IMG/VR virus record: IMGVR_UViG_3300017917_002466
Coordinates: 186,001 to 250,000 of that record
Direction: 5' to 3' (one strand)
Length of the DNA: 64,000 bases
Made by a program: the position numbers and the translations under genes. Of the stretch, positions 1-49,937 are shown piece after piece. The notes below the pieces were generated by a model. That model saw nothing but the letters and a program-made list of their open reading frames with translations. It was not told the origin of the DNA and searched no databases. The number at the start of each line of letters is the position of its first letter. The first letter of the stretch is position 1.

Positions 1-127
1 GTTTTTTAGTTTTAGCACAAAGAGTACTAACTAATGCAGAGTCAACCCCACCACTAATACCAATAACAAAACCATTGTAACTCTGTAGCCAATTAACAAT
101 TTGTTTTTCAACTTTAATGCAGTCCAT
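1..127 (-). CDS. nadE: NH3-dependent NAD+ synthetase, 5' part only (runs off the window)
   Basis: Manual translation from ATG at 127: MDCIKVEKQIVNWLQSYNGFVIGISGGVDSALVSTLCAKTKK; SGGxDS PP-loop in NadE context; directly downstream of pncA. Confidence 0.85.
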   Translation of the reverse strand, partial: MDCIKVEKQIVNWLQSYNGFVIGISGGVDSALVSTLCAKTKK

Positions 128-144
128 AACACTTTATTTTCGTA

Positions 145-675
145 TTAAAGTTTTGCTACTGCAAAGTGCGCTCCAGCAGCGCGCATTTCTTTGATTGCTA
201 CTTCGGTAGTTTCTGGAGCAACCCCAGCAATTGCATTCTCAAAGACGTAAGTCTTAATCCCAAGTTTACAAAGACCAAGAACAGCCGCCTTCACACAGTA
301 GTCAGTGGCAACTCCAGCGATCCAAGCATCAGTAATCTTATTCTTTTTCAACCAATCTACAATCTCCTTGCTTCCAAGTTCTGGATGAAAAACATCATAA
401 GTCTTTTTATTAAAAACCACTGCTTTATTAGCGGCACATTCTATTATACTAGCTTGTCCGCTGGTTTCTGTTATACAATGAGGTGGAAAAATCTTAAACT
501 CTGGATCGTTGACATCGTGACAGTCCATTGTCTTGATAAGAAGAATATTGTCTTCTTTAACCATTTCTGTAATTTTGGCAAGAACTGGCCTAATTTTATC
601 GGTATTCGGAACAGCCAGTGTTCCACCAAAAAAGAAATCATTTTGACAATCAACTAGAACAATTACCTTTTTCAT
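145..675 (-). CDS. pncA: Nicotinamidase/pyrazinamidase (isochorismatase family)
   Basis: VDCQNDF, D-x-H metal ligands, FPPHC, K, GVATDYCV (catalytic Cys) motifs. Confidence 0.92.
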   Translation of the reverse strand: MKKVIVLVDCQNDFFFGGTLAVPNTDKIRPVLAKITEMVKEDNILLIKTMDCHDVNDPEFKIFPPHCITETSGQASIIECAANKAVVFNKKTYDVFHPELGSKEIVDWLKKNKITDAWIAGVATDYCVKAAVLGLCKLGIKTYVFENAIAGVAPETTEVAIKEMRAAGAHFAVAKL

Positions 676-704
676 ACTATATACTCCTTTGTTGAGTTCA
701 CAAT

Positions 705-733
705 AATATAATATCTTGTAACAAGTTTGTCAA
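705..733 (-). promoter_or_regulatory. sigma70-type early promoter for pncA-nadE
   Basis: TTGACA-17 nt-TATATT on minus strand. Confidence 0.75.
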
Positions 734-741
734 GGACAATC

Positions 742-837
742 TATAAATACCTTTAGAAGTTGGGAGACAAGGGCCGTACACCTTTTTCTTGCCAATCCAA
801 GAATTACCTCAACTTCCTTACTTATACCTGATTGGAG
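742..837 (+). ncRNA. Late promoter box plus structured pseudoknotted 5' leader, copy A
   Basis: TATAAATA 742-749; P1 756-765/807-816; GACA; P2 770-784; P3 786-791/798-803; loop CCAATC 792-797 complementary to GATTGG 830-835, overlapping SD GGAG. Confidence 0.75.
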
Positions 838-843
838 AGCTAT

Positions 844-912
844 TGTCATAAAGATATTCATAAAAGATTTAGTAAATTTACAACAGAAGAATACTTAATT
901 CTGTTTATCTAG
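844..912 (+). pseudogene. C-terminal stub of an HNH endonuclease
   Basis: Translates CHKDIHKRFSKFTTEEYLILFI*, like the CHKAIHKQFG tail of 3404-4084; follows leader A; overlaps the stop of 895-1176 tail-to-tail. Confidence 0.6.
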
Positions 913-1176
913 TTTATTAGATTCGTCAAAATATTGTTTGATTATTTTCAAAACTTGAACCCAGAACACCTTTATTGAAAGTTCTTTGGATTCTCTCATA
1001 TTGTTATCCACGTATCTTATCCCTTTTTCAAAATCCAGAGTATCGTGCAAAAAACCTATAAGAATATAATCAAGTTTATTATTCATCTTATTTGGAACCA
1101 TAGACTGAAGTTCAGCTAATTCCTTTATCATCTTGATAACTAAATCTTTCTTAGTCTGATTTTTTCTTACGTTCAT
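895..1176 (-). CDS. Hypothetical protein
   Basis: 93 aa ORF in a translationally coupled minus-strand run. Confidence 0.65.
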   Translation of the reverse strand: MNVRKNQTKKDLVIKMIKELAELQSMVPNKMNNKLDYILIGFLHDTLDFEKGIRYVDNNMRESKELSIKVFWVQVLKIIKQYFDESNKLDKQN

Positions 1177-1284
1177 AGAATGTAGACCTTGACTGTTGTT
1201 TCACCAAAACATTCGTTAATCATCTTCTCAACGATTGACCACTCACCATTGGTCAACCCACAACCAATCTTTATACTTAATCAT
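1173..1284 (-). pseudogene. Macrodomain (Appr-1-p processing) gene reduced to N- and C-terminal stubs
   Basis: MIKYK start joined out of frame to KIGCGLTNGEWSIVEKMINECFGETTVKVYIL*, the typical macrodomain C-terminal motif (PxIGCGLxGGxW). Confidence 0.7.
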
Positions 1285-1520
1285 TAAAACAACACTCCCT
1301 CGTCCATAAGACGAATCTTTTTTTCTTTTTCACATTTTTCAATACATTCATCACATAGGGCTACTTGATAGACATTTCCATCAAAAAGACTTCCGTATGG
1401 CATTTGAAGAAGAAAAGTCACCCCACCGTTTACATTGTTGAATGATTTGTTAAGGATACTCTCAAGCTTCTTTCCGCAAATCATACAGACTGGCTTCTTA
1501 AATTTCTTCTTGTTGTTCAT
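1284..1520 (-). CDS. Hypothetical Zn-finger protein (CxxC...CxxC)
   Basis: Start moved from 1610 to 1520 (GGAGG RBS before MNNKKKF); CMIC and CDEC pairs. Confidence 0.65.
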   Translation of the reverse strand: MNNKKKFKKPVCMICGKKLESILNKSFNNVNGGVTFLLQMPYGSLFDGNVYQVALCDECIEKCEKEKKIRLMDEGVLF

Positions 1521-1552
1521 TTCTTCCTCCGTTAAATATTTATCATTAAAAA

Positions 1553-1649
1553 TATAAATACAAGTAGAAGTTAAAAGACAGCGTAGGCATACGTTTCTTT
1601 GCTCACTCAAAGATTATTTTAACTTCACTAACATAAACCTAGTGAGAGG
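1553..1649 (+). ncRNA. Late promoter box plus structured pseudoknotted 5' leader, copy C
   Basis: TATAAATA 1553-1560; P1 1567-1576/1617-1626; GACA; P2 GCGTA/TACGT; P3 1596-1601/1608-1613; loop CTCACT 1602-1607 complementary to AGTGAG 1641-1646 at SD AGAGG. Confidence 0.8.
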
Positions 1650-1656
1650 TATATCT

Positions 1657-2406
1657 ATGCGTCCTAAAATTATCAAAGATGAATTTATCCAGAAAGCTAA
1701 TTTTATTCATAATAATAAATTTAATTATGATTTAGTTGTTTTTAACAACGCAAATGATAAAATAACTATCAAATGTAATGATTGTCAAAATATATTTATT
1801 CAAAGATTAAGTTCACACATAGAAAAAAATCACCCTAAAGGATGCCCAAATTGTGCAATAAAACAACAATCCAATGTTCGTTTATATAAAGCATCAAACA
1901 AATTTCATAAAACTATTCAAATTAAACAACCAGATATTGATTTTTCAAAAGATACTTATAGTGGTTGGAATAAGCCTTATAAATGTATTTGTAAAAAATG
2001 TAATCATGTTTGGTTATCTACTCCCAATAATTTAATGAATGGTAAAGGTTGTCCAAAATGTAAATCTTCTAAAGGCGAAAAACAAATTGAACAATGGCTT
2101 AAAGAACATAGTATAAAGTTTATTCCACAAATGAAGTTTGATAAATGTAAAAATAAAAGAAAACTTCCTTTTGACTTTTATTTACCAGAACTTAATACTT
2201 GTATTGAATATGACGGTGAACAACATTTTAAACCTTTTGGTTTTGGTGAAAATCCACAAGAGAAATTTCAAAGAACTAAAATAAATGATGAAATTAAAAA
2301 TCAATTTTGCAAACAAAAAAGAATTAATTTATTAAGGATTAAATTTAATGAGAATATTAATTCTCGTCTAAATCATTATTTAAAACTTCTTTTTAAAATC
2401 TTCTAA
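1657..2406 (+). mobile_element. Free-standing putative homing endonuclease: Zn-ribbon repeats plus C-terminal PD-(D/E)XK (DUF559/Vsr-like) nuclease
   Basis: CNDC/GCPNC/GCPKC modules; SKGEKQI...LPFDFY...IEYDGEQH...LLRI; antisense insertion; ATG 1657 fits the SD. Confidence 0.85.
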
Positions 2407-2937
2407 ACTGATTGTATTCTTTTTAATTTCTTCTTCGCTCATATTCTTTATTTCTTCAACCCTCTGCTTGAGATCATCCATCTTATCCTGTATTTCTTCT
2501 TCTTCGTATCCAATGAATGTCATTTCGTATAAAATATGTGCCACGATGTCAGCTCTACTAAGTTCTATATTATTTGATGTTTCCGTATCAATTTCCATAC
2601 CCAAAAATTCGCACCATTTATTAAACTCAAGAGCCCAATTGACTTCAGAATTTAAAAACTCTTCATCGGCATTAGGAAACAGTTCAGCATCCTCAGTATC
2701 TTTGTGGAGCTTCCCATTCCTTCCGTGAACAGTCCAATATCCATTTTCATTGAATTCATCAGGCGGAACCCACTCAACACAAATTCTCATATCACTTTCT
2801 TTTGAATTCATTGTAGTAAGATTCTGAACAACACTCATATAATCTTCAAGATTATGTGGAGTGACTTCATAAAGCTTAATAAGAGATTCTTTAATTTCGC
2901 TCCAAGTTACGTCTTCCAAAAGTTCTTTGAACTTCAT
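2380..2937 (-). CDS. Hypothetical acidic protein
   Basis: 185 aa ORF with phage-like composition; 3' end overlaps the endonuclease 3' end. Confidence 0.7.
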   Translation of the reverse strand: MKFKELLEDVTWSEIKESLIKLYEVTPHNLEDYMSVVQNLTTMNSKESDMRICVEWVPPDEFNENGYWTVHGRNGKLHKDTEDAELFPNADEEFLNSEVNWALEFNKWCEFLGMEIDTETSNNIELSRADIVAHILYEMTFIGYEEEEIQDKMDDLKQRVEEIKNMSEEEIKKNTISLEDFKKKF

Positions 2938-3403: not shown

Positions 3404-4084
3404 ATGATTATTTCCAAAACAGTTCTAGTTAATATTAATTCATCAAATATTTATTACTTTGAGTCTAAAGGTTATTCTATTCCAAAACAAATTGATAAAC
3501 ATAAAAGAATCGTTGTCAAAAGAGGAAATAAAATAGAAGTCAAAGTTTCTGATTTGCCAAAAGGAAGTCATATTAAAGTTCTTTGTAAATGTGATGTTTG
3601 TAAAAAAGAGAAACTAATAATTTTCAAATCTTTAACTAATATATTTAAATATCTTTGTCATAGTTGTTCTCATAAAAAATTAATAGGAGATAAACGATTG
3701 AAGTTTTGGGAAAACAAAAATTTTTCACTAAGTCATAAAAATAAACTTTGTTCTAATAATTGGAATGCCAAACATACTGGTAAAAATAGTCCTCTTTGGA
3801 ACTTCAAATTATCTGATAAAGAAAGAGGAAAACAACATCAAATTTCTGGAATTAATCAATGGAAAAGAAAAGTTAAAGAAAGAGATAATCATACTTGTCA
3901 AAAATGTGGTTCAAAAGAATTTCTACAAGTCCACCATATAAATAACTTTAAAGATTTTGAAGAACAAAGAACTGATATTAATAACGGAATTACTTTGTGT
4001 CAAGAATGTCATAAAGCTATTCATAAACAGTTTGGTTTAAAAACTAAACTAAGTAATCTTTTAGAATTCTTAAATCATACTTAA
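3404..4084 (+). mobile_element. Free-standing HNH homing endonuclease
   Basis: C-terminal CQKCG...VHHINNF...NGITLCQECHKAIH HNH motif; antisense; overlaps the ligA stop. Confidence 0.88.
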
Positions 4085-5995
4085 AAATTCTTTTTCGTTG
4101 ATTACTTTAACTCCTATTTTAGATGCTTTTTCATTCTTAGCACTTCCAGAATCATTATCGTTAGTTACCAAATAATCAAGTCCTTTAGAAATAGTTGATT
4201 TATAAACTCCTCCGTTATCTTCAACCATTTTGATAAAATCATCTCTCTTTCCTAAAGATAAAGCACCAGTTACACAAAAAGACTTTCCATCAAGATTACT
4301 TCTTTTATTTGACTTTTTTTCCTTCTTCATAATTGTTATTCCAACCTCCATCAGTTCATTTATAACCTTCTGCTTCTTCTTCAATCCATCTATGATTGCC
4401 TCGGCTGTAACTCTTCCAATTCCCTTGATACCAGCCAAGTCTTCAACTCCCTGCGAAAGAATCTTGGTAACAGAATCCAAACCATTCTTTTCAAGAAGCT
4501 CTGCCGTCTTGTCACTGAAGTTCGGGATATTCAAACCTCCGACGAACTCCCCAAAAGACAGTTCTTTCTTTGCGTTCAAAGTATCCACAATCTTGTTTGC
4601 GGAACTAGAACCGAATCCTTCAAGCTCGCAAATCATATTCGGCTTCAATTTGTAAAGATCAGCAGGAGTCTTGACAAGACCCGCTTCATACAACTTCTCA
4701 AGTGTAGCAGAAGCAATCCCTTTCAGATCAAGCTTCTTCACCCACTTATTCAGATTGCCAATTTCTCCACCAGAGCATCCTTCATTTTCGCAAGTAAGGA
4801 AAATTCCACCAACAGAAACCTTCTCTCCACAAATAGGACAGTTCTTCGGAACGATAAGCTTATCTCCGCGTTTTGCTCCCGGATGATTACTCAAGTTCTC
4901 GCATATCTGTGGTATAACATCGTTTGCGCGCTCAACAAGAACTGTATCTCCCTTGTGGAAATTAAACTCATTGAACATTCCAAGATTGTGAACAGAAGCC
5001 CTTGATACCTTGACTCCTGCAAGTTCAACAGTCTCCATCACAAGAACTGGAGTGATTCTTCCCGAATTGCCCAACTGCCACTCAACCCCAAGAACCTTTG
5101 TCTGCTTCTTCATACTTGTAAACTTCCAAGCAATCATTCCACGATAGTTCTCACCCTTGAATCCAAGAGTCATAAGAACATCAATATCATTTGGCTCAAT
5201 CACAAGACCATCAATTTCGTGGTCAAGGCTTGCTCTCGTACTTTGTTCGTATTCATTGTAAACAAGTTTGGCTGTTTCAATATTGCCACAAAAATGCTTA
5301 CAAGTCCTCAGACCAAGCTTCTTCTCAATGAAGTCATACATTTCCTTCTTGGTCTTGAAATCTCCACTCGCAAAGTAATATTCAACATAAAGATACTCGG
5401 TATATTTTCCGTCATATCCCTTTGCGATACCAGAAGCTCCGTTCCTTACATTCTGATAAGGTCTTTCTCCGCGGATATTGCAGACCTGATTGACAGCCGA
5501 AAAATCGCCAGTCTTCATCATAATCTCACCACGAAGACTGCCGGTATAAGAATTAGGAACATTAGCTTTGACATTCTGCATCCGAAGAACATTCTGAGTA
5601 ATCACTTCACCAGTGATACCATCGCCCCTTGTGATTGCTTTTGTCAGCTTTCCATTGGTATATTCAATTTCAAGGGAGATACCATCAAGCTTCTCTGAAA
5701 CAATCATTTCCTCACCAGCAAGCCCATTATCCTTTGCCCAAGCAACGAACTCTTCAACAACGTTGACCTTGTTGCAACTGTGCATCGGAATCTTGTGCTT
5801 TGCCTTATCCCATTCAGAAGCTTCAGGAACAGGGGCACCAATCGTCTTCAAGAAGGGATCATTCGGATAAAGCCTTGTGAACTCATCTTTGAGTGCATCA
5901 AAATCCTTATCAGAAATTGTAGAAAATGACTTGTTGTAATAAGAGTCACAGGCTTCAACTAATTTTCTTTTCATTTCCTCATATTTCATAATCAA
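4070..5995 (-). CDS. ligA: NAD-dependent DNA ligase
   Basis: EKLDG adenylation motif, RGE, OB fold, C4 Zn finger, HhH repeats, C-terminal BRCT. Confidence 0.97.
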   Translation of the reverse strand: MIMKYEEMKRKLVEACDSYYNKSFSTISDKDFDALKDEFTRLYPNDPFLKTIGAPVPEASEWDKAKHKIPMHSCNKVNVVEEFVAWAKDNGLAGEEMIVSEKLDGISLEIEYTNGKLTKAITRGDGITGEVITQNVLRMQNVKANVPNSYTGSLRGEIMMKTGDFSAVNQVCNIRGERPYQNVRNGASGIAKGYDGKYTEYLYVEYYFASGDFKTKKEMYDFIEKKLGLRTCKHFCGNIETAKLVYNEYEQSTRASLDHEIDGLVIEPNDIDVLMTLGFKGENYRGMIAWKFTSMKKQTKVLGVEWQLGNSGRITPVLVMETVELAGVKVSRASVHNLGMFNEFNFHKGDTVLVERANDVIPQICENLSNHPGAKRGDKLIVPKNCPICGEKVSVGGIFLTCENEGCSGGEIGNLNKWVKKLDLKGIASATLEKLYEAGLVKTPADLYKLKPNMICELEGFGSSSANKIVDTLNAKKELSFGEFVGGLNIPNFSDKTAELLEKNGLDSVTKILSQGVEDLAGIKGIGRVTAEAIIDGLKKKQKVINELMEVGITIMKKEKKSNKRSNLDGKSFCVTGALSLGKRDDFIKMVEDNGGVYKSTISKGLDYLVTNDNDSGSAKNEKASKIGVKVINEKEFLSMI

Positions 5996-10113: not shown

Positions 10114-10533
10114 TTATCTCCTTGCTAAGAAAAGCTCATCATCATAGGTTTGAACTTCTCTATTTTCTATAAGACTATGTATTTCTTCTAAAGCTTCATT
10201 TTGATTTTTGAAAGTTCCATATTTAAGAACCAAGTTCTCATCAAATATTCCAAAAATATTATCTCTCTCAAACACAAATAGACGATTTCCTTTAGAGTGT
10301 GGTTTTCCATCTAAATCCAAATTATTTAAACTATCTTCGTATTCTGTAAAAAATACGCTACCGTCATTAGACAAAGGGTAATTACCTTGTCCATCAGTCA
10401 CAGTATATAGAGTGTATGGACCTTTTTCAAAATTCCAAGACCACATATCCAATTCAATTACTTGTCTTGGAGATTCTTCTTCCATCTTTTCAAGAAGAAA
10501 ATTGGCTTTGTTCATATAAAAGTCTGATTTCAT
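10114..10533 (-). CDS. Hypothetical protein
   Basis: 139 aa; TATAAATA upstream at 10579-10586. Confidence 0.65.
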   Translation of the reverse strand: MKSDFYMNKANFLLEKMEEESPRQVIELDMWSWNFEKGPYTLYTVTDGQGNYPLSNDGSVFFTEYEDSLNNLDLDGKPHSKGNRLFVFERDNIFGIFDENLVLKYGTFKNQNEALEEIHSLIENREVQTYDDELFLARR

Positions 10534-10644
10534 TGATTGATTCCTTTAATATTTTGTAATCTTTTCTTTATTATTAAGTATTTATAGTTTAACCAATCTT
10601 TCTAAACGGAAATAAGCACATAACAAAAGAAATGTTCGATAAAT

Positions 10645-12069
10645 TTATTTCCAGTCTTTTATAAACTTTTCAATTGATTTCATATCATTTATATCAATTT
10701 CATTATTAAGTACATAATCTATTGTGTCTTTAATAATTTTACCAAATTGAATTCCTTGTTTAATATCTGGTCTTAATTTCATTATTAAAGCACCATTAAT
10801 AACTTTTTTAACAGGATCAACAATATCTTTACCTTTAACCATATTTCTGACTTTTTCTATTTTTTCTTGAATATCATCCCATTCTTTTTGGTCAAATAAA
10901 CTACCTCTGCTTTTATTATCACAATATGCCGTCTTTTCTAATAAATCAAAATATGGCGATTTAACTAAAGTAGCAACAGTACTATTATTCATTTTTAAAA
11001 TATCAAAAAATTTCATATGATTTTCGGCTACCCATTTTATAGCAGAAATTGTATCATTATCCATCTTCATTCTTTTACCAATTTCTTCTATCATCTTACC
11101 AGATTGTTCAGCATGGCCATGATAAGAATGGGTTCCTTTATCTGTTAATGCATATGTTTTATTTTTACCCAAATCATGCATTAATAAACACCAATTTAAT
11201 AAAGCATTAGGTTCTTTATTTACTTTAAGAACTTCCATGACATGACCGAAAACATTTGGAGATTCTGGATGGTGGTCTGGTGAATGTAACATTGACTCTT
11301 GTTCCACCAATTCAGGAAGAACATATTTCAATATTCCAATATCCTTTAACATAATAATAGCATCTGCAAACTTTGATCCGGATTGTTTTGCCATAGATGT
11401 AAGTTCTTTTAGTATTCTTTCTTGTGCGACCTTCTTTATCTCTGGTGCGTGTGACTTCATTGCTTCTAATGTTTCTTTGTCAATATCAAATCCAAGACGA
11501 GAAGCAAAACGAATTCCACGAAGAACTCTTACTTCATCTTCCTTAAAGCGTAAATTAGGATCACCAACGGCAGCAACCACTTTCTTTTCAATATGGTCTA
11601 ATCCACCATGATGGTCTATAATATTACCATCTTTATCAATACCAAGTTGATTGATTGTAAAATCTCTACGAGAAGCATCATCCTTAAATGATGTTGTAAG
11701 TTCTACTTTGTCAGCTCCTTTACCACCTTCACCAGAATACAAATCTTTTCTATAGGTAGCAATTTCTACGTTTTGACCTTTGTATGGAATAACAGTAACG
11801 CCCATAGCCTTATTCTTTCCAATGTCAATAGTTCTTCCAAATATCTTTTCTATTTCATCTGGAGTAGCATTAGTAGTAATATCAACATCATTTGGATTAT
11901 TACCTAATACCAAATCTCTAACAACACCACCAACCATGAGGGCTTCAAAACCAGCAGCATTGATCTTATCTAAAATCTCAATAGCGTTTCTGATTTCGGG
12001 ATTGCTTTGTTTAATGGAATCCCAGTTATTTAATTTAGTTTCTTGAAAGTAATACTTTTCAAATCTCAT
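10645..12069 (-). CDS. cca: CCA-adding tRNA nucleotidyltransferase (class II) with HD domain; CTS-like N-terminus
   Basis: VGGVVRD, DVDITT, RRDFTIN, EDxxRxxRxIRF, HD motif MHDLGK; starts MRFEKYYFQE. Confidence 0.92.
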   Translation of the reverse strand: MRFEKYYFQETKLNNWDSIKQSNPEIRNAIEILDKINAAGFEALMVGGVVRDLVLGNNPNDVDITTNATPDEIEKIFGRTIDIGKNKAMGVTVIPYKGQNVEIATYRKDLYSGEGGKGADKVELTTSFKDDASRRDFTINQLGIDKDGNIIDHHGGLDHIEKKVVAAVGDPNLRFKEDEVRVLRGIRFASRLGFDIDKETLEAMKSHAPEIKKVAQERILKELTSMAKQSGSKFADAIIMLKDIGILKYVLPELVEQESMLHSPDHHPESPNVFGHVMEVLKVNKEPNALLNWCLLMHDLGKNKTYALTDKGTHSYHGHAEQSGKMIEEIGKRMKMDNDTISAIKWVAENHMKFFDILKMNNSTVATLVKSPYFDLLEKTAYCDNKSRGSLFDQKEWDDIQEKIEKVRNMVKGKDIVDPVKKVINGALIMKLRPDIKQGIQFGKIIKDTIDYVLNNEIDINDMKSIEKFIKDWK

Positions 12070-13752: not shown

Positions 13753-13833
13753 AACCATTCTCCTATTAGTTCATATAATCTGGAAACTTCGCATTTGGAA
13801 ATAAATTTAATAAAATTGGTTTAATTTTTTTAA

Positions 13834-14313
13834 TTAATTTTTTTCTTCTTTTGGATATTCATTTATTTCCAAAACTTCATCTTCTTTAATATTTATATCT
13901 TCTTTAACCATAGTTACTTGTCCTTTCATTCTATTTTCTTCTTTAAATCCTTTTGCTAACAAAATCTTTTCCATTGTTGGATTAACAACATATGCTCTTA
14001 TTATAGGTTCATCAAAAGCTTCTTTGTCTTGATTATATGTATCAATTGCAATATCAACCAATCTCTTTCCAACTCCCTTACCTTGAAAATCATCACGAAC
14101 TACAACATCAAAAGAGAATTCTCCACTTAACCAAGTTGTCCAAAGTGCACCAACTACTTCATTATTTAAAATAGCAACTGTATGAATTTCTTTATCTGAT
14201 AGGACTCCAATATCATATTTCTTGGCCATTTTATAGGCATCATCTATATGCTTTGAGTCTAGCTCATCTGCATAAACATATGCAACATTTTCATAAAATT
14301 CTACAAAGTTCAT
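13834..14313 (-). CDS. GNAT N-acetyltransferase; CTS-like N-terminus
   Basis: VVVRDDFQGKGVGKRL motif A; MNFVEFYE. Confidence 0.85.
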   Translation of the reverse strand: MNFVEFYENVAYVYADELDSKHIDDAYKMAKKYDIGVLSDKEIHTVAILNNEVVGALWTTWLSGEFSFDVVVRDDFQGKGVGKRLVDIAIDTYNQDKEAFDEPIIRAYVVNPTMEKILLAKGFKEENRMKGQVTMVKEDINIKEDEVLEINEYPKEEKN

Positions 14314-14693
14314 GTTATATCTTTAAGTACCTTTTGGAAAACTTTCTTGCCCAAAGGAGTAAAACCGCCCGTCTTCTTCCTATGTTCTGGGTATTTTTCC
14401 CAAAACTCTTTAGCAAGCAAAGTTCCTATTCCCTGTTTTTGAAATTCTTGAACCACCGATAAATCAGTTTCATCACCACCAAGTTTAAGAATAAATCCGA
14501 CTTCTTGAATACCAATTTTTGCTATGATTCCTTCCCCATTATCATATAGCTTTACTTTTCCAACCATCTTATAAGGCTTCAATCCATCTGTCATACCTTC
14601 CATATCTCCGATATGCAGAACTGGTCTTGAAGAATTCGGAATATCTTTTCCGTAATCTTCTATATTTTCTTTATAAAAGCTTATAAAGTTCAT
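14310..14693 (-). CDS. GNAT-like acetyltransferase; CTS-like N-terminus
   Basis: VVQEFQKQGIGTLL motif A; MNFISFYKE. Confidence 0.7.
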   Translation of the reverse strand: MNFISFYKENIEDYGKDIPNSSRPVLHIGDMEGMTDGLKPYKMVGKVKLYDNGEGIIAKIGIQEVGFILKLGGDETDLSVVQEFQKQGIGTLLAKEFWEKYPEHRKKTGGFTPLGKKVFQKVLKDIT

Positions 14694-15322
14694 TTTGTTT
14701 CCTTCACCTTTCCTGGAATAAAAACTTCAAGATGATCTCTACTTATAAATCCACCCTTACCTCTTTTGTAAGGGTCTGCTATTGGTCTTGGCTTTCCTTT
14801 CTCTTGACCTAACCACTTATCACCTTTAAGTGACTTAATATCTCTTGATACAACTTTATTTAAAAGTAATGGTAAATCTTTAGTATCTACTTTAACCCAA
14901 GAACCTTTATATTCTTTACCAACTCCAAATTCTTTTGCCTCTTGAACAAAATGACACCAAATATCTCCGTGATGCTGAAACTTCTTAATAGGTGGAAATC
15001 TATACTCTGGTTCTCCATACTCGTCCGTTCCAATCTTAACCATCATTTCCTTATTCCACGCTGCAAGAAAAGGCTCAATATAAGGCCAGATATATGCATA
15101 GATTCCTCTATGCTCTGGTGCGTGATGGAATCCAACAATCGGACTTCCGAGTTCTTCACTTTTAGAAAACGCCTTTTCCTTTCTCTTATCTTGCTTGGGG
15201 TTCATATGACCCCAACGAGCAAACATAATTTTAGGAGCCTTCTCAGATTTTTCTCTTGCCTTTACTCTGATAGGCTCCTCGTCTTCATCGTCATAATAAT
15301 AGGCTTCAAATTGATTAATCAT
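14690..15322 (-). CDS. Hypothetical protein; CTS-like N-terminus
   Basis: MINQFEAYYYDD; coupled operon. Confidence 0.7.
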   Translation of the reverse strand: MINQFEAYYYDDEDEEPIRVKAREKSEKAPKIMFARWGHMNPKQDKRKEKAFSKSEELGSPIVGFHHAPEHRGIYAYIWPYIEPFLAAWNKEMMVKIGTDEYGEPEYRFPPIKKFQHHGDIWCHFVQEAKEFGVGKEYKGSWVKVDTKDLPLLLNKVVSRDIKSLKGDKWLGQEKGKPRPIADPYKRGKGGFISRDHLEVFIPGKVKETK

Positions 15323-15686
15323 AAAAATCTATTACGTCTGCCTCATTAAAAGCTATTTCCATATTATATTCATTTATTTGAACATCGCTTATATCTTTAT
15401 TTTGTAACAACTCGTTTTTTATCTTAACAATAGTTTCTGGTGGAACTCTACCATTATATGCTTTGCTCGTAATAGGAAATGAGATATATGCATCAAATTT
15501 ATGGATTCCAGTAGGAACATCTTTCTTTTTGATTTCTCCATCAATTTCAATTCCATATTGACTCAAGTATTCTTTTAATTCATTAACGCGAATGTCTGCT
15601 ATCATAAACATATCTTCATCAGCACCTACAGTAACAAAAGAAGATTTGGATTCAAGCGCCTCTTTTAAATATTCATTAAAACTCAT
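15315..15686 (-). CDS. Hypothetical protein; CTS-like N-terminus
   Basis: Start 15686 (MSFNEYLKEALES). Confidence 0.7.
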   Translation of the reverse strand: MSFNEYLKEALESKSSFVTVGADEDMFMIADIRVNELKEYLSQYGIEIDGEIKKKDVPTGIHKFDAYISFPITSKAYNGRVPPETIVKIKNELLQNKDISDVQINEYNMEIAFNEADVIDFYD

Positions 15687-15687
15687 A

Positions 15688-16293
15688 TTATGCTCCTTCA
15701 CTCTTTTCTTCCGGGTCTGAAAGGTGGAAATCTATTTGATCTTTGAACTTAAAGAAGTCTACAAGGTAAACATCGTTATCAGTCCAATTGATAAGCTCAA
15801 ACTTTTTCTCATCATCCATATCTTTAGGAAACGAAACCCATTCACTATTCTCATAATCCCAATACTTTTTGAAAGCATCTATTGGAACCATATGAGCAAC
15901 TGCTACAGAATGTCCCTGCTTTTCAATATCCATTGCCTTTGCGGAATCGTCTGTAACCATAACAAGCTTACCTTCTGTAAACTTATCATAAGAACCTTCT
16001 GGTCTATCCGCTGAATAGTAAACTATAAAAGTTCTCTTTGGTTTTTGTGTTACTTGTGGTTCAGATGGTGGTGTATTGAAATCTGTATTGCTTCTATCTC
16101 CACCAAGCTTCTGTTGTCTCTTGATTTTGACTTCCAATGGAGCATACTTCCACTGATCTTCTTTAGGAAGACTCTTTACCTTAATCTTATTACGCTGGCC
16201 GGATTTAGTCCTATGCCAAACATATCTTTGGCGCCAGTCGTCGTTAGGATTTCTTTCTTCTGTTAGTAAACAGAAAAATTGAAAATCATTCAT
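15688..16293 (-). CDS. Hypothetical protein; CTS-like N-terminus
   Basis: MNDFQFFCLLTEE; coupled operon. Confidence 0.7.
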   Translation of the reverse strand: MNDFQFFCLLTEERNPNDDWRQRYVWHRTKSGQRNKIKVKSLPKEDQWKYAPLEVKIKRQQKLGGDRSNTDFNTPPSEPQVTQKPKRTFIVYYSADRPEGSYDKFTEGKLVMVTDDSAKAMDIEKQGHSVAVAHMVPIDAFKKYWDYENSEWVSFPKDMDDEKKFELINWTDNDVYLVDFFKFKDQIDFHLSDPEEKSEGA

Positions 16294-17819
16294 TATTTAC
16301 CTAACTCCTTTTGAAGTCTTCCAAAAACTCCTGCGTGTTGCTTTGCAAGGGCTCCAGTAATCTTTGGCTGTTCACCCCTCTGAGCCTGCTCAATAGCATT
16401 ATTTAGAGCTTTGATTAATGAACCCCATTTCTTCTGTGCAGGTGCTTGGCCTTGTGCAATTGCTTGTTCTATTGCTTGCTCAAACTTTCCGGTAAGAGCA
16501 TCAACACTCTTTGCCAATCCTTCTGCACTTGCTTCCTGTGAAATAGGTACCTCAACATTTCCATCCTTTGGTCTGGAAACATATGCCTCAATTGCTTTCA
16601 TCAACACCTCTCTATTTCCTTGACTCTTTATAATCTTGGTAAAAAGGTCAGCTCTATCTTGACGAATTGGAACAAGTCTGGTAAACTTCTTTTTCATTTC
16701 CTCTGGAACCAATGCAAGGGCTTGTTCTCCTTTTTCGGCTGGCTTACCCTCCGCTGCATAAAGAGCAGCGAACTCGGGAGTTCCAACAACTGAAGTTAAT
16801 ATGTTTTCTAACTCTATCTGATAAGGAGTTCCTGAACCGTGAATAGGAAGGAAGATATGCTTCTTCTCTTTCTTCTTGCAATAGGAACACTTTCTACAGT
16901 CTCCCATACAATGAACCCCACGGGACACTGGTTCACCATTAAATTCCTTAAGCTCCTTCTTTTCAATCAAATCCATCACTCTGTTGAACTCTTCAAGCTC
17001 AAGAGGAACAAAGTTATTATCAAGCATAAATCCTGAACCATTTATACAAACATTGTCTCCCAAGTCTCCAATCTCTAAATCACTTCTATGTGTATATGTG
17101 TAAAGTGTAAGTGGGGCGCCCAATTTCTTAAGCTCATCACCAACTTGTTGTAACTTCTCAACATCGTTTACTTCAGCAAGCTTTGCTTTTCTTTCTTCTG
17201 GAACCCTTGCCAAAAGTTCTGGATTGGATGGAAGGTTTCTTATTTCTCCTGCTTCATTGATTCTGATGAACCTGATAGAAGGCATTACTTCGGCAATCTG
17301 TGCAATTCCCTGTGCAATTCCTCTTGCTGTCAAACAAGCCCACTGTTCTTCGTGTCTTAGGTTCTTTGCCAAAGCATCTTTCCATTGCTTCTCAAATCTA
17401 AGTGCATAACACTGACCATTCGGACCAAGCTTACAAGTTCCAAGGATTGCAGACATACAGTTACCGGCTGTTGACATATTAAGAAGAACTGTATCTCCAC
17501 CAATCTTTGCATTACCGGCGGCAACCTCAAAGTCTCTTTCAACTCCAGTCTCTGGGTCTTTCACCTTAGTTCTAAGCTTATTTGGCTTCTCTATCTTTTC
17601 TTCTTCGGAAAGATTATCAAAGTGTTCATAGGCTTCTTTAAGGCTCTTGAATATCTTGCCATCTCTTGACAATCTGATAACATCGTGTTCTATAAGCTCT
17701 GGAAGATACTTCAAAGGAATACCAATCTCAAGTTCACCCGTCTCGTTGATAGAGCAAAGGTCTAAATCAATGGGCATATAGAAAGTGTTATCTTTAAAGT
17801 AATGGTCTAAAAATCTCAT
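16293..17819 (-). CDS. Gp88-like Fe-S/radical-SAM-like protein with helical C-terminal extension; CTS-like N-terminus
   Basis: NMSTAGNCMSAILGTC...CYA, IRINEAGEI, YTYTH, CMGDCRKCSYC match the Gp88 family pattern; MRFLDHYFKD. Confidence 0.6.
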   Translation of the reverse strand: MRFLDHYFKDNTFYMPIDLDLCSINETGELEIGIPLKYLPELIEHDVIRLSRDGKIFKSLKEAYEHFDNLSEEEKIEKPNKLRTKVKDPETGVERDFEVAAGNAKIGGDTVLLNMSTAGNCMSAILGTCKLGPNGQCYALRFEKQWKDALAKNLRHEEQWACLTARGIAQGIAQIAEVMPSIRFIRINEAGEIRNLPSNPELLARVPEERKAKLAEVNDVEKLQQVGDELKKLGAPLTLYTYTHRSDLEIGDLGDNVCINGSGFMLDNNFVPLELEEFNRVMDLIEKKELKEFNGEPVSRGVHCMGDCRKCSYCKKKEKKHIFLPIHGSGTPYQIELENILTSVVGTPEFAALYAAEGKPAEKGEQALALVPEEMKKKFTRLVPIRQDRADLFTKIIKSQGNREVLMKAIEAYVSRPKDGNVEVPISQEASAEGLAKSVDALTGKFEQAIEQAIAQGQAPAQKKWGSLIKALNNAIEQAQRGEQPKITGALAKQHAGVFGRLQKELGK

Positions 17820-48524: not shown

Positions 48525-49937
48525 TTATAAATTCTTTAATCTTATAATATTAGCTATTTCTTCTTTTTCTTCGGTTGTTAAAATCTCTGGTGTCCATTTC
48601 ATTGATTTTAGATATTCCAAATTGTTTCTTATATTAGAAGCTGAAATTTTTTCATCCGATTCTTCGCCCACTCTACCGAATTCCATAATCCGTACTTTAG
48701 AGTATTTATCTTTATGTTTTACAAAATAATCATACTTCTTCGTATCGCCTTCTGTTCCTCCGATAAGAACCTGACTAACTTCGTTCTGGTGAGTATCCAC
48801 CCAATCGTATATATCTTTAACCGGTGTTATTTTACTTAACAATATTTCAACTGGTTTGTTGATATGCCTTATATAAACTTCCCATATCTTTTTAGATTGT
48901 TCGGCTGTGATAGTTTCTCCTTCTCTCAGCTTATGACCAATAAAAATGATTATCTTATCAGACTGTTTTGATAGTTGTTCAACTATACTAAAATGTCCTT
49001 TGTGTGGTGGTTTAAACCCACCGGCATACAATCCTATAATTCCAGCATCACTACTTTCCCAAAAGTAATGTTCAACAAAGTTGCCAGAGAAAGCCTGTTT
49101 GATTTTATTAATGGCTCCCAATTTCATTTTTTCTTTTGCTGTTCCAACTTCACCAGATTTAACTGATACTAAAGATTGAAAGGTACCAGGGATTCTTCTT
49201 CTTGATCTTGGCTGTTTAACTTGTTTATTAACTGAATCTAATAGTTCATCGAAGCTACTATATATGTTATAATTGTGAAACAGTTTTTCCACATCAGGCC
49301 AATTAGTTGTAGACCAAACATCTATATGTCCAACATCTCTACTATCTTTAACATCAACGACTCTTAAAGTTAACTTATTAGAGGAAAGATTAAATTCATA
49401 CTCTTGATCTTTTTCTAATGCGGGCACTTTTCTAATTCCTAATTTCTTAAAAACAGTATTGTAATCTTCTTCTAACAACAACACTTTAGCCAAAGCCACC
49501 AGTATGCCTTGTTTATCTGCCGGTAGATTTAGGAACTGTTCTTTGAAATCATATTCCTCTGTGGACAAAGCAATGATATTATCTATTTGAATATTACCTT
49601 CAGCCCCAACAATAGGATACAAAATCGTAATTATTTCACCTGAATTATAATACTTACGTCCTTTATATAGTGAAGATTGGAAAGGAACAATAACTCTATC
49701 TGGCATAGATGATACATAATCTATAATTGCTTTTTTGACTGCTTTCTTATCGTTTCCCTTAAAATGAACTACTATATCTAAATCACCATAATCATCTTTG
49801 GATTTTATTTTAGCACTACCTGTTAATTTGGCATTTTGAAAATCAGGAATATTTTGTAGTACTTTTCTCTGATAATCAGCAAAAGTTCTATCAACATTGC
49901 TTTTTAGTATTCTGGAACCACCAGCAACTCCACTCAT
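48525..49937 (-). CDS. Pol-beta-superfamily nucleotidyltransferase fused to an HxGH cytidylyl/adenylyltransferase domain
   Basis: TGS...YGDLDIV...QIDN; GGFKPPHKGH; internal NFVEHYFWES at the junction. Confidence 0.8.
   Translation of the reverse strand: MSGVAGGSRILKSNVDRTFADYQRKVLQNIPDFQNAKLTGSAKIKSKDDYGDLDIVVHFKGNDKKAVKKAIIDYVSSMPDRVIVPFQSSLYKGRKYYNSGEIITILYPIVGAEGNIQIDNIIALSTEEYDFKEQFLNLPADKQGILVALAKVLLLEEDYNTVFKKLGIRKVPALEKDQEYEFNLSSNKLTLRVVDVKDSRDVGHIDVWSTTNWPDVEKLFHNYNIYSSFDELLDSVNKQVKQPRSRRRIPGTFQSLVSVKSGEVGTAKEKMKLGAINKIKQAFSGNFVEHYFWESSDAGIIGLYAGGFKPPHKGHFSIVEQLSKQSDKIIIFIGHKLREGETITAEQSKKIWEVYIRHINKPVEILLSKITPVKDIYDWVDTHQNEVSQVLIGGTEGDTKKYDYFVKHKDKYSKVRIMEFGRVGEESDEKISASNIRNNLEYLKSMKWTPEILTTEEKEEIANIIRLKNL

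What the first reader, a model, noticed from the sequence alone, without database searches (positions are those of the whole stretch)
1..675. Phage-encoded deamidating NAD+ salvage (PncA plus NadE) beside an NAD-dependent ligase
Seen: pncA followed in-operon by the nadE 5' end under a sigma70 early promoter; ligA lies 3.4 kb away and a macrodomain relic 0.5 kb away. Established: the phage NAD-reconstitution pathways NARP1 (Adps/Namat) and NARP2 (Nampt/NMNAT) counter NAD-depleting defences (Thoeris, SIR2/DSR, TIR); PncA-PncB-NadD-NadE is the deamidating salvage route. Inference: a different NARP-type route that recycles the nicotinamide released by NADases.
Basis: partly seen in the sequence, partly recalled or inferred. 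Interest (0 to 1): 0.6.

Follow-up and report, generated by a model that had tools for sequence, protein, structure and literature searches.

The report
Phage nicotinamide-to-NAD+ salvage operon
A 254-kb T4-like phage carries all four enzymes that turn nicotinamide back into NAD+, plus an ADP-ribose-cleaving enzyme, next to its NAD-dependent DNA ligase; such gene sets are already reported in giant phages, but nobody has tested whether this route defeats bacterial NAD-destroying defences.

Summary
Window 145-675 (-) encodes a nicotinamidase (PncA) with its catalytic triad and metal site intact. Window 2-127 (-) is the start of a 260-aa NH3-dependent NadE, 17 nt downstream. A TTGACA-N17-TATATT promoter sits at 733-705. 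LigA is at 4070-5995. A genuine macrodomain remnant lies at 1176-1280.

The window is bases 186001-250000 of a 253,664-bp distant T4-like myovirus. The DNA just outside the window completes the pathway: nadE, a conserved 102-aa ORF, nadD, an ADP-ribose-pyrophosphatase-like Nudix, then pncB 2.3 kb further under the same promoter type.

The same gene order recurs in a 107-kb relative. PncA lies within 4 kb of pncB, nadE or nadD in 9 of 11 IMG/VR PncA loci, and similar clusters occur in a 735-kb megaphage and in cultured phages Phosso and Atu_ph07.

A counter-defence role is plausible but untested. General NAD+ supply for LigA fits equally well.

The concept is not new. "NAD-jumbo phages" with pncB-nadD-nadE clusters, LigA and a counter-defence hypothesis were published in 2024. 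What this locus adds is PncA and the ADPR hydrolase. It is a new member of a known kind.

The parts
2..127 (-). 5' end (42 codons) of nadE, an NH3-dependent NAD+ synthetase. The full gene is G000:185345-186127 (L006:15345-16127), 260 aa.
   Evidence: PF02540 E 1.5e-6 for the fragment and 7e-47 for the full gene. TIGR00552 scores 166.7 against a cut-off of 63.65. SGGVDS P-loop present and no glutaminase domain. Best solved relative is 3fiu, 6e-33.
145..675 (-). pncA, a nicotinamidase of 176 aa; first gene of the operon.
   Evidence: PF00857 1.7e-25. Solved nicotinamidases 1ilw 6e-25 and 3pl1 9e-17. The D9/K90/C127 triad and D51/H53/H66 metal site are conserved.
684..689 (-). Shine-Dalgarno sequence AAGGAG, 8 nt upstream of the pncA ATG.
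   Evidence: Read directly from the sequence.
705..733 (-). Sigma-70-type promoter TTGACA-N17-TATATT in front of pncA.
   Evidence: 11 of 12 consensus matches. It is one of 51 perfect sites in the genome against 0.55 in shuffles, all co-oriented with genes between 55 and 193 kb. The same type stands in front of pncB at L006:11600-11572.
895..1176 (-). Conserved 93-aa ORF of unknown function, upstream of the pncA promoter.
   Evidence: 69% identical to the 90-aa ORF that lies between Macro and pncA in relative L018. No Pfam, PHROG or NCBIfam hit.
1176..1280 (-). Macrodomain gene remnant: only the C-terminal ~32 codons survive, with no start codon.
   Evidence: tblastn against the intact Macro genes of L018 (E 5e-11, 69% identity) and L017 (E 7e-8). 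DNA alignment; translation.
1284..1610 (-). 108-aa Cys-rich ORF of unknown function.
   Evidence: 46% identical to the 89-aa ORF preceding Macro in L018. No family hit.
1642..2406 (+). Free-standing endonuclease-like gene (zinc-finger DUF4379/DUF723 plus a PvuRts1I-like N-terminal region), inserted on the opposite strand.
   Evidence: Pfam hits. It is absent at this position in L017 and L018.
2380..2937 (-). DUF6557 protein, syntenic between ligA and pncA in all relatives.
   Evidence: PF20194 1.9e-33. 70% identical to the L018 homologue.
3404..4084 (+). HNH homing-endonuclease-like gene abutting the 3' end of ligA.
   Evidence: PF01844 5e-10.
4070..5995 (-). ligA, an NAD+-dependent DNA ligase of 641 aa, intact.
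   Evidence: Adenylation, OB, HhH and BRCT domains. TIGR00575 scores 463.5 against 444.45 and NF005932 scores 430 against 369.

Best explanation
The window opens inside a phage operon that encodes the complete four-step deamidating (PncA plus Preiss-Handler) route from nicotinamide to NAD+.

The steps are:
- PncA hydrolyses nicotinamide to nicotinate and NH3.
- PncB joins nicotinate to PRPP to give NaMN.
- NadD adenylates NaMN to NaAD.
- The single-domain, NH3-dependent NadE amidates NaAD to NAD+.

A co-transcribed Nudix enzyme of the ADP-ribose/ADP-sugar pyrophosphatase type is inferred to split ADP-ribose into AMP and ribose-5-phosphate. The host's Prs can turn ribose-5-phosphate back into PRPP.

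The genes are read from host sigma-70-type promoters. One stands before pncA-nadE-orf102-nadD-nudix and one before pncB.

The net effect is that the infected cell can rebuild NAD+ from both products of NAD+ cleavage. This would sustain the phage's own NAD-dependent ligase and buffer the infection against NAD+ loss, including loss caused by NADase defence systems.

Shown here: gene identities, intact active-site motifs, gene order, the promoter class and recurrence in other phages. Inferred: enzyme activities, the fate of ADPR, timing of expression and any counter-defence effect.
For: Gene identities:
- PncA.
- NadE: TIGR00552 above its cut-off.
- NadD: TIGR00482 scores 114.9 against 112.45; best solved relative is B. 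subtilis NadD 1kam, 5e-18; the SSTYIR motif is present.
- Nudix: canonical G-x5-E-x7-REffEE-x-G box; best solved relatives are NUDT5 and ADPR pyrophosphatases.
- PncB: NF003704 scores 417 against 379 and TIGR01514 scores 362 against 269.55.

Operon structure:
- Gaps of 17, 23 and 8 nt or overlaps on one strand.
- Promoters of one class lie before pncA and pncB.

Conservation:
- A relative with only 58% PncA identity keeps the order ligA-DUF6557-Macro-pncA-nadE-orf102-nadD-nudix...pncB.
- 9 of 11 IMG/VR PncA loci have pncB, nadE or nadD within 4 kb. Another phage-like contig has nadD-like, pncA and a PRTase in a row.
- Independent lineages carry PncA-like genes in such clusters. The 735-kb LR756501 has PncA, NadE and PncB within 8 kb. 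The cultured Sinorhizobium phage Phosso has NadE, PncB, Nudix, NMNAT and a PncA-like 'hydrolase'. Agrobacterium phage Atu_ph07 has PncA-like, ADPR pyrophosphatase and PncB.

Rarity and age:
- Among 50,697 GenBank phage records, PncA matches 10, PncB 13 and NadE 39, so the clustering is not chance.
- The cluster's GC (30-36%) equals the genome's 33.5%, so it is not a recent acquisition or an assembly chimera.

Precedent:
- Ordinary salvage enzymes do defeat NADase defences. NARP2 is Nampt plus NMNAT (10.1101/2024.02.11.579819) and NARP3 is PnuC plus NadR (PMC13464706).
Against: - No activity, expression or infection data exist.
- The route costs PRPP and about 3 ATP per NAD+ and needs four enzymes. 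It may be too slow to outrun a NADase.
- The phage encodes no Prs.
- The macrodomain gene that accompanies the cluster in relatives has decayed here, and NADAR is absent. An ADP-ribose-centred anti-defence island is therefore not under uniform selection.
- The PncA and Nudix scores are below NCBIfam equivalog cut-offs, so their substrate assignments rest on motifs, solved relatives and context.
- The host is unknown.
Confidence: 0.6

Rival explanations
1. The cluster is an auxiliary metabolic module with no defence role. It raises or maintains the NAD+ pool for the phage's NAD-dependent ligase and for host redox metabolism during a long jumbo-phage infection, perhaps in a host with weak salvage.
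For: - ligA is syntenic with the cluster in the window and in both relatives.
- LigA is the only NAD+ consumer found. There is no SIR2, no exotoxin-type ADP-ribosyltransferase and no Tpt1.
- The published view of NAD-jumbo phages stresses self-sufficient NAD+ synthesis and use (PMC11662467).
- NARP2 raises NAD+ even without a defence system.
Against: - PncA and an ADPR pyrophosphatase act on exactly the two products of NADase cleavage.
- Relatives place Macro and NADAR, which are ADP-ribose-removing domains, in the same neighbourhood.
- The two roles are not exclusive.
Confidence: 0.3
2. The end product is the same but the last two steps run in the other order. NadE acts as an NMN synthetase (NaMN to NMN), as in Francisella, and the NadD-like enzyme adenylates NMN.
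For: - The best solved relative of the phage NadE is 3fiu (6e-33), against 2e-17 for B. subtilis NadE. From memory, 3fiu is the F. tularensis NMN synthetase; FtNadE activity is cited in PMC11197623.
- The protein is short (260 aa), like FtNadE.
- TIGR00482 covers both nicotinate- and nicotinamide-nucleotide adenylyltransferases.
Against: - The adenylyltransferase is closest to NaMN-preferring bacterial NadD (1kam, 3dv2, 2qtr).
- The second-best NadE relative is an ordinary archaeal NAD synthetase (2e18).
- The specificity-determining residues could not be checked because the primary paper is not held.
Confidence: 0.12
3. The isochorismatase-family protein is not a nicotinamidase but another cysteine hydrolase, so the phage has only a nicotinate-dependent Preiss-Handler route.
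For: The score against the E. coli-type PncA equivalog NF008623 is 86 bits, below the cut-off of 174. PHROG 19305 is annotated 'unknown function'.
Against: - The top solved matches are all nicotinamidases.
- The PncA-specific metal ligands D51/H53/H66 are conserved alongside the D-K-C triad.
- There is tight, repeated linkage to pncB, nadD and nadE in unrelated phages.
Confidence: 0.05

Closest known systems
Preiss-Handler clusters of 'NAD-jumbo phages' (pncB-nadD-nadE, e.g. Kuafu_71; Li et al. 2024, PMC11662467)
   Same: A phage larger than 200 kb with physically clustered pncB, nadD and nadE. An NAD-dependent ligase is in the same genome. The same hypothesis applies: self-sufficient NAD+ supply and possible counter-defence.
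   Different: - This cluster starts with PncA, so it begins from nicotinamide rather than nicotinate, and it includes an ADPR-pyrophosphatase-like Nudix.
- The phage is a distant T4-like myovirus with sigma-70 promoters and strong Shine-Dalgarno sites, not a Bacteroidota-infecting Kuafu-clade phage.
- That paper mentions phage pncA only in passing.
NARP2 (Nampt plus bifunctional NMNAT/Nudix of Vibrio phage KVP40; 10.1101/2024.02.11.579819)
   Same: Classical salvage chemistry: nicotinamide plus PRPP plus ATP gives NAD+. It is found in a large T4-like phage, a Nudix enzyme is associated, and it is PRPP-dependent.
   Different: NARP2 takes two amidated steps through NMN. This locus takes four steps through nicotinate, NaMN and NaAD. 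The only NAPRTase-family gene is a PncB equivalog, not a Nampt. NARP2 is validated experimentally; this route is not.
NARP1 (Adps plus Namat)
   Same: It would reuse the products of NAD+ cleavage.
   Different: There is no Prs-like Adps and no Namat. ADPR is predicted to be hydrolysed, not pyrophosphorylated.
NARP3 (PnuC plus NadR; PMC13464706)
   Same: A phage-borne version of a standard bacterial NAD+ salvage branch.
   Different: There is no PnuC. The substrate is intracellular nicotinamide, not imported nicotinamide riboside.
Bacterial PncA-PncB-NadD-NadE salvage pathway
   Same: The same four enzyme families with intact motifs.
   Different: Here they are encoded by a virus, clustered, and driven by phage promoter copies. 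The PncA is a short, archaeal-like 176-aa form whose closest relatives (45-79% identity) are on metagenome contigs; where context was looked up these are phage-like.

Membership tests
Nicotinamidase PncA (isochorismatase-like cysteine hydrolase) | Isochorismatase fold domain above the Pfam threshold | tested here: met
   PF00857 scores 90.6 bits against a cut-off of 27.
Nicotinamidase PncA (isochorismatase-like cysteine hydrolase) | Asp-Lys-Cys catalytic triad | tested here: met
   D9, K90 and C127 align with D10/K94/C133 of 1ilw. D9 and C127 are invariant and K90 is nearly invariant in 32 homologues.
Nicotinamidase PncA (isochorismatase-like cysteine hydrolase) | Asp/His/His metal-binding site that sets nicotinamidases apart from other family members | tested here: met
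   D51, H53 and H66 align with D52/H54/H71 of 1ilw and are conserved in the alignment.
Nicotinamidase PncA (isochorismatase-like cysteine hydrolase) | Score above the NCBIfam equivalog NF008623 (E. coli-type PncA) | tested here: not met
   86 bits against a cut-off of 174. The protein is of the short archaeal-like type.
Nicotinamidase PncA (isochorismatase-like cysteine hydrolase) | Nicotinamide deamidase activity | not testable with these tools
   Needs an enzyme assay.
NH3-dependent NAD+ synthetase NadE | Equivalog-domain score, SGGxDS ATP pyrophosphatase loop, no glutaminase domain | tested here: met
   TIGR00552 scores 166.7 against 63.65. ISGGVDS is present. The protein is 260 aa with a single domain.
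NaMN adenylyltransferase NadD | Equivalog score and nucleotidyltransferase motifs (H-x-G-H, S-x-T-x-x-R) | tested here: met
   TIGR00482 scores 114.9 against 112.45, which is marginal. The first motif reads PPHISH (Ser in place of Gly). SSTYIR is present.
Nicotinate phosphoribosyltransferase PncB | Equivalog score with both the N-terminal and catalytic domains | tested here: met
   TIGR01514 scores 362.1 against 269.55 and NF003704 scores 417 against 379. PF17767 and PF04095 are both present.
ADP-ribose pyrophosphatase (Nudix) | Canonical Nudix box plus the ADPRase-type N-terminal extension | tested here: met
   The GLIDKNESIEEAARREFFEEVG box is present. The alignment to NUDT5 covers residues 24-176.
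ADP-ribose pyrophosphatase (Nudix) | Score above an ADPRase equivalog cut-off (NudE, NudF) | tested here: not met
   NF008736 scores 51.9 against 169 and NF008003 scores 35.4 against 248. The substrate is inferred only.
NAD-dependent DNA ligase LigA | Equivalog score and the full domain set (Ia/adenylation, OB, HhH, BRCT) | tested here: met
   TIGR00575 scores 463.5 against 444.45. The domain Ia motif SYY...SDKDFD is read from the sequence.
NARP1 | Prs-like Adps plus Namat | tested here: not met
   No Pribosyltran_N match in the genome. The only NAPRTase-family gene is PncB.
NARP2 | Nampt (nicotinamide PRTase) plus NMNAT | tested here: not met
   The PRTase passes the nicotinate-specific equivalogs. 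It matches the Nampt PHROG 448 only at 1.2e-8.
NARP3 | PnuC transporter plus NadR | tested here: not met
   No PF04973 match. The NadR model TIGR01526 scores only 16.8 bits on NadD.
NAD+-reconstitution counter-defence (functional class) | Restores NAD+ and phage growth in cells carrying NADase defence systems | not testable with these tools
   Needs co-expression and infection assays.
Macro domain protein | Complete ~150-aa Macro fold with its ADP-ribose binding loops | tested here: not met
   Only the last 32 of 151 residues remain. Pfam Macro finds nothing in the genome.

The most novel reading that the evidence does not exclude
The pncA-nadE-orf102-nadD-nudix plus pncB set is a fourth, deamidating NAD+-reconstitution route used as a broad counter-defence. 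PncA and the ADPR pyrophosphatase would capture both NADase products. The NH3 released by PncA could feed the adjacent NH3-dependent NadE. The route would let phages escape Thoeris, DSR and SIR2-type defences in hosts where Nampt-type salvage is unavailable. The conserved 102-aa ORF between nadE and nadD could be a new accessory factor.
Probability: 0.35. Interest if true: 0.6.

Novelty: new member of a known kind. Interest (0 to 1): 0.42.

Why it matters
NAD+ depletion is one of the commonest bacterial anti-phage strategies, and three phage routes that rebuild NAD+ have been validated (NARP1, NARP2 and NARP3). The deamidating route is the only major bacterial salvage branch not yet tested in that role.

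This locus is a compact, apparently intact example. It has six genes, two promoters of the same type, all catalytic motifs present, and the nicotinamidase and ADPR hydrolase that link it directly to NADase products. It would make a good construct for the test.

The comparison also shows that cultured phages (Sinorhizobium phage Phosso and Agrobacterium phage Atu_ph07) carry unannotated PncA-like genes in similar clusters. The question can therefore be addressed genetically.

If the route only provisions LigA, that is still useful. It would show that not every phage NAD+ pathway is an anti-defence device.

Tried and rejected
I therefore used no read or transcript evidence and did not use read laying.
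- Megablast of the 9-kb cluster against GenBank phages found nothing.
- Pfam Macro on the whole genome found nothing. The relic only became visible by comparison with relatives.
- I tested for a T4-type late-promoter signature to support the 'early' label. TATAAATA occurs 84 times against about 75 in shuffles, so it says nothing.
- The ESM Atlas look-ups for the 102-aa and 146-aa ORFs gave no usable lead. Pfam, NCBIfam and PHROGs were also blank for them.
- I considered NrtR, the Nudix-type NAD regulator, as an identity for the Nudix gene and rejected it. The Nudix box is canonical and the architecture matches ADPRases.
- I could not check the NMN-synthetase specificity residues because PMC2651253 is not held.
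- The supplementary tables of PMC11662467 are not held, so I could not see how many of their phages carry pncA.
- Searches for Prs, Nampt, PnuC, NADAR, SIR2, exotoxin-type ADP-ribosyltransferase and Tpt1 in the genome were all negative.

Full report
**Where the window lies**

The window is bases 186001-250000 of a 253,664-bp virus record with direct terminal repeats. GC content is 33.5%. The phage has a tail sheath, baseplate wedge, portal and a gp23-type major head protein. That head protein is about 34% identical to those of T4-like cyanomyoviruses. It is therefore a distant T4-superfamily myovirus of jumbo size. The host is unknown. Perfect sigma-70-type promoters and AAGGAG ribosome-binding sites are visible. 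From general knowledge, that pattern argues against a Bacteroidota host.

**Checking the observation**

- **pncA.** Window 145-675 (-) is a 176-aa isochorismatase-family protein (PF00857, E 1.7e-25). Its best solved relatives are all nicotinamidases: P. horikoshii 1ilw at 6e-25 and M. tuberculosis PncA 3pl1 at 9e-17. The alignments place Asp9, Lys90 and Cys127 on the catalytic triad. They place Asp51, His53 and His66 on the metal ligands. In an alignment of 32 homologues these six residues are invariant or nearly invariant.
- **nadE.** Seventeen bases downstream, window 127-2 (-) encodes the first 42 residues of NadE, including the SGGVDS loop. The full gene continues outside the window and is a 260-aa single-domain NH3-dependent NAD+ synthetase. 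TIGR00552 scores 166.7 against a cut-off of 63.65.
- **Promoter.** Upstream of pncA lie TTGACA (733-728), a 17-nt spacer, TATATT (710-705) and AAGGAG 8 nt before the ATG. The genome has 51 perfect TTGACA-N17-TATA[AT]T sites against 0.55 in shuffles. All lie between 55 and 193 kb and all point with the genes. This is a genuine promoter class, but nothing here shows that it is early.
- **ligA.** Window 4070-5995 (-) passes the LigA equivalog cut-offs.
- **Macrodomain relic.** In close relatives an intact 151-aa Macro gene sits between DUF6557 and pncA. In the window only the last 32 codons remain, at 1176-1271, with 69% identity and E 5e-11. The frame opens right after a stop codon and has no start.

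**What the adjacent DNA adds**

On the same strand, in L006 coordinates (window coordinate plus 16000), the genes run in this order:

| Gene | L006 coordinates | Notes |
|---|---|---|
| pncA | 16145-16675 | |
| nadE | 15345-16127 | |
| conserved ORF | 15013-15321 | 102 aa, unknown function |
| nadD | 14408-15004 | TIGR00482 scores 114.9 against 112.45; closest solved relative is B. subtilis NadD 1kam |
| Nudix | 13819-14457 | canonical Nudix box; best solved relatives are ADP-sugar/ADP-ribose pyrophosphatases |
| small ORFs | | several, unknown function |
| pncB | 10323-11489 | TIGR01514 scores 362 against 269.55; NF003704 scores 417 against 379 |

Gaps between genes from pncA to the Nudix gene are 17, 23 and 8 nt or overlaps. 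pncB has its own TTGACA-N17-TATATT promoter. All four enzymes of the nicotinamide to nicotinate to NaMN to NaAD to NAD+ route are therefore present within 6.4 kb, plus an ADPR hydrolase.

The genome has no Prs, no second NAPRTase-family gene (Nampt or Namat), no PnuC, no NADAR and no intact Macro. The route is therefore distinct from NARP1, NARP2 and NARP3.

**Is it more than chance, and is it conserved?**

- Among 50,697 GenBank phage records, PncA matches 10, PncB 13 and NadE 39.
- A 107-kb metagenomic relative has only 58% PncA identity. It keeps the order ligA-DUF6557-Macro-pncA-nadE-orf102-nadD-nudix, then a vault-shoulder-like protein, then NADAR, then pncB.
- Of 11 IMG/VR contigs with a PncA homologue, 9 have pncB, nadE or nadD within 4 kb.
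- Another phage-like contig has a nadD-like gene, pncA and a PRTase in a row.
- Unrelated giant phages show the same association. The 735-kb LR756501 has PncA, NadE and PncB within 8 kb.
- Cultured Sinorhizobium phage Phosso has NadE, PncB, a MutT-like Nudix, an NMNAT and a 'hydrolase' that is PncA-like. Its sequence shows the DTQYDF, DTHH, HC and GVAADFC motifs.
- Cultured Agrobacterium phage Atu_ph07 has a PncA-like 'hypothetical protein', an ADP-ribose pyrophosphatase and PncB.
- The cluster's GC matches the rest of the genome.

**Mechanism**

The most likely function is NAD+ regeneration from nicotinamide in the infected cell. The Nudix enzyme would remove ADP-ribose and return ribose-5-phosphate to the host's PRPP supply. 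Both substrates are the products of TIR, SIR2 and SEFIR NADases. Two experimentally validated precedents show that ordinary salvage enzymes carried by phages defeat such defences: NARP2 and NARP3. That makes a counter-defence role plausible.

The pairing of PncA, which releases NH3, with an NH3-dependent NadE is suggestive but remains inference.

The main rival explanation is plain provisioning of NAD+ for the phage's own LigA. LigA is syntenic with the cluster in all three related genomes. It is also the only NAD+ consumer found among those I searched for. The two roles are compatible, and the data here cannot separate them.

A minor variant concerns the order of the last two steps. The phage NadE is closest to 3fiu. 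From memory, that is the Francisella NMN synthetase (its activity is cited in PMC11197623). NaMN to NMN to NAD+ is therefore possible. The NadD-like enzyme, however, resembles NaMN-preferring NadDs.

**Comparison with the literature**

- Li et al. 2024 (PMC11662467) described 174 'NAD-jumbo phages' with complete salvage or Preiss-Handler sets. Their examples include clustered pncB-nadD-nadE, frequent NAD-dependent ligases, and the hypothesis that this counteracts NAD+ depletion. They mention phage pncA only in passing.
- A 2026 paper on Xanthomonas phage X1 makes the same suggestion for pncB, nadM, nadD and nadE.
- The NARP1/2 preprint does not mention PncA, NadE or the deamidating route. The NARP3 paper does not mention PncA or NadE and names the Preiss-Handler route only in a reference title. 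No phage 'NARP4' exists in the searched literature.

The idea is therefore published at the bioinformatic level and is untested experimentally. This locus is a clean new member of that class. Its added points of interest are the nicotinamidase at the head of the operon, the ADPR hydrolase, the T4-like background and the identified promoters.

**Verdict**

The locus is a new member of a known kind, of moderate interest mainly as a ready-made candidate for testing a deamidating NAD+-reconstitution route.

Noticed in passing
window 4070-5995 versus L017:4470-7492 and L018:105-3205: ligA is a single 641-aa gene in the window. In both relatives it is split into an adenylation/OB gene (372-391 aa) and an HhH/BRCT gene (268-278 aa), with one or two ORFs between them; in L018 one of these is DUF723 endonuclease-like. 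In the window an HNH endonuclease gene (3404-4084, +) abuts the 3' end of ligA instead.
   Followed up: partly
window 1547-1659: The region around the start of the 108-aa ORF and upstream of the endonuclease-like gene (1642-2406) recurs at 76-81% identity at G000:158796-158881, 159835-159911 and 171334-171444. It is a repeated element of unknown role.
   Followed up: no
window 735-895: About 220 bp, including a 43-codon ORF at 730-861, lies between the 93-aa ORF and the pncA promoter. This stretch is absent in relative L018, where the promoter follows the upstream gene almost directly.
   Followed up: no
window 48525-49937 (-): A 470-aa protein has a C-terminal cytidylyltransferase-like domain (residues 303-438) that weakly resembles archaeal/NadM-type NMN adenylyltransferases (E about 1e-6, far below cut-offs). 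Its N-terminal 300 residues are unassigned. It may be a second nucleotidyltransferase related to NAD metabolism.
   Followed up: partly
L006:15013-15321 and G000:182823-183011: The 102-aa ORF between nadE and nadD is conserved at the same position in relative L017 (49% identity). It has a paralogue-like match 2 kb downstream in this genome (41% over 69 residues). No family or structural lead was found.
   Followed up: partly
L017:13047-16513: The 107-kb relative carries a 908-aa protein with vault/MVP-shoulder domains and a NADAR-domain protein between the Nudix gene and pncB. The window's genome matches neither the NADAR protein nor the vault/MVP-like protein.
   Followed up: partly
L006:2596-6108 (G000:172596-176108): An RNA-repair-like group lies about 10 kb from the NAD cluster: a Thg1-like tRNA-His guanylyltransferase, an RlaP nucleotidyltransferase and an R2K ATP-grasp protein.
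   Followed up: no
G000:55229-193271: All 51 perfect TTGACA-N17-TATA[AT]T promoters lie in this span and switch strand with the genes near 105 kb. A dense run of about 25 between 125 and 142 kb shares an extended gggcTTGACAa...tgTATATT form in front of very small ORFs.
   Followed up: partly
L024:12726-16229 (G000:72726-76229): The ribonucleotide reductase large subunit is 1167 aa. Its family matches fall in two blocks (residues 26-264 and 666-1166), which suggests an inserted element such as an intein.
   Followed up: no
L006:7989-9188 (G000:177989-179188): A gene for a 399-aa SPFH/Band-7-like protein just beyond pncB sits in a stretch of 41-46% GC, well above the genome's 33.5%.
   Followed up: no
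L037:11566-12213 (Sinorhizobium phage Phosso) and L020:3350-3958 (Agrobacterium phage Atu_ph07): Genes annotated 'hydrolase' and 'hypothetical protein' in these cultured jumbo phages are PncA-like (tblastn 2e-8 and 5e-9; motifs are visible in the Phosso translation). They sit in clusters with PncB and a Nudix gene (plus NadE and an NMNAT in Phosso). The deposited annotation does not identify them as nicotinamidases.
   Followed up: partly
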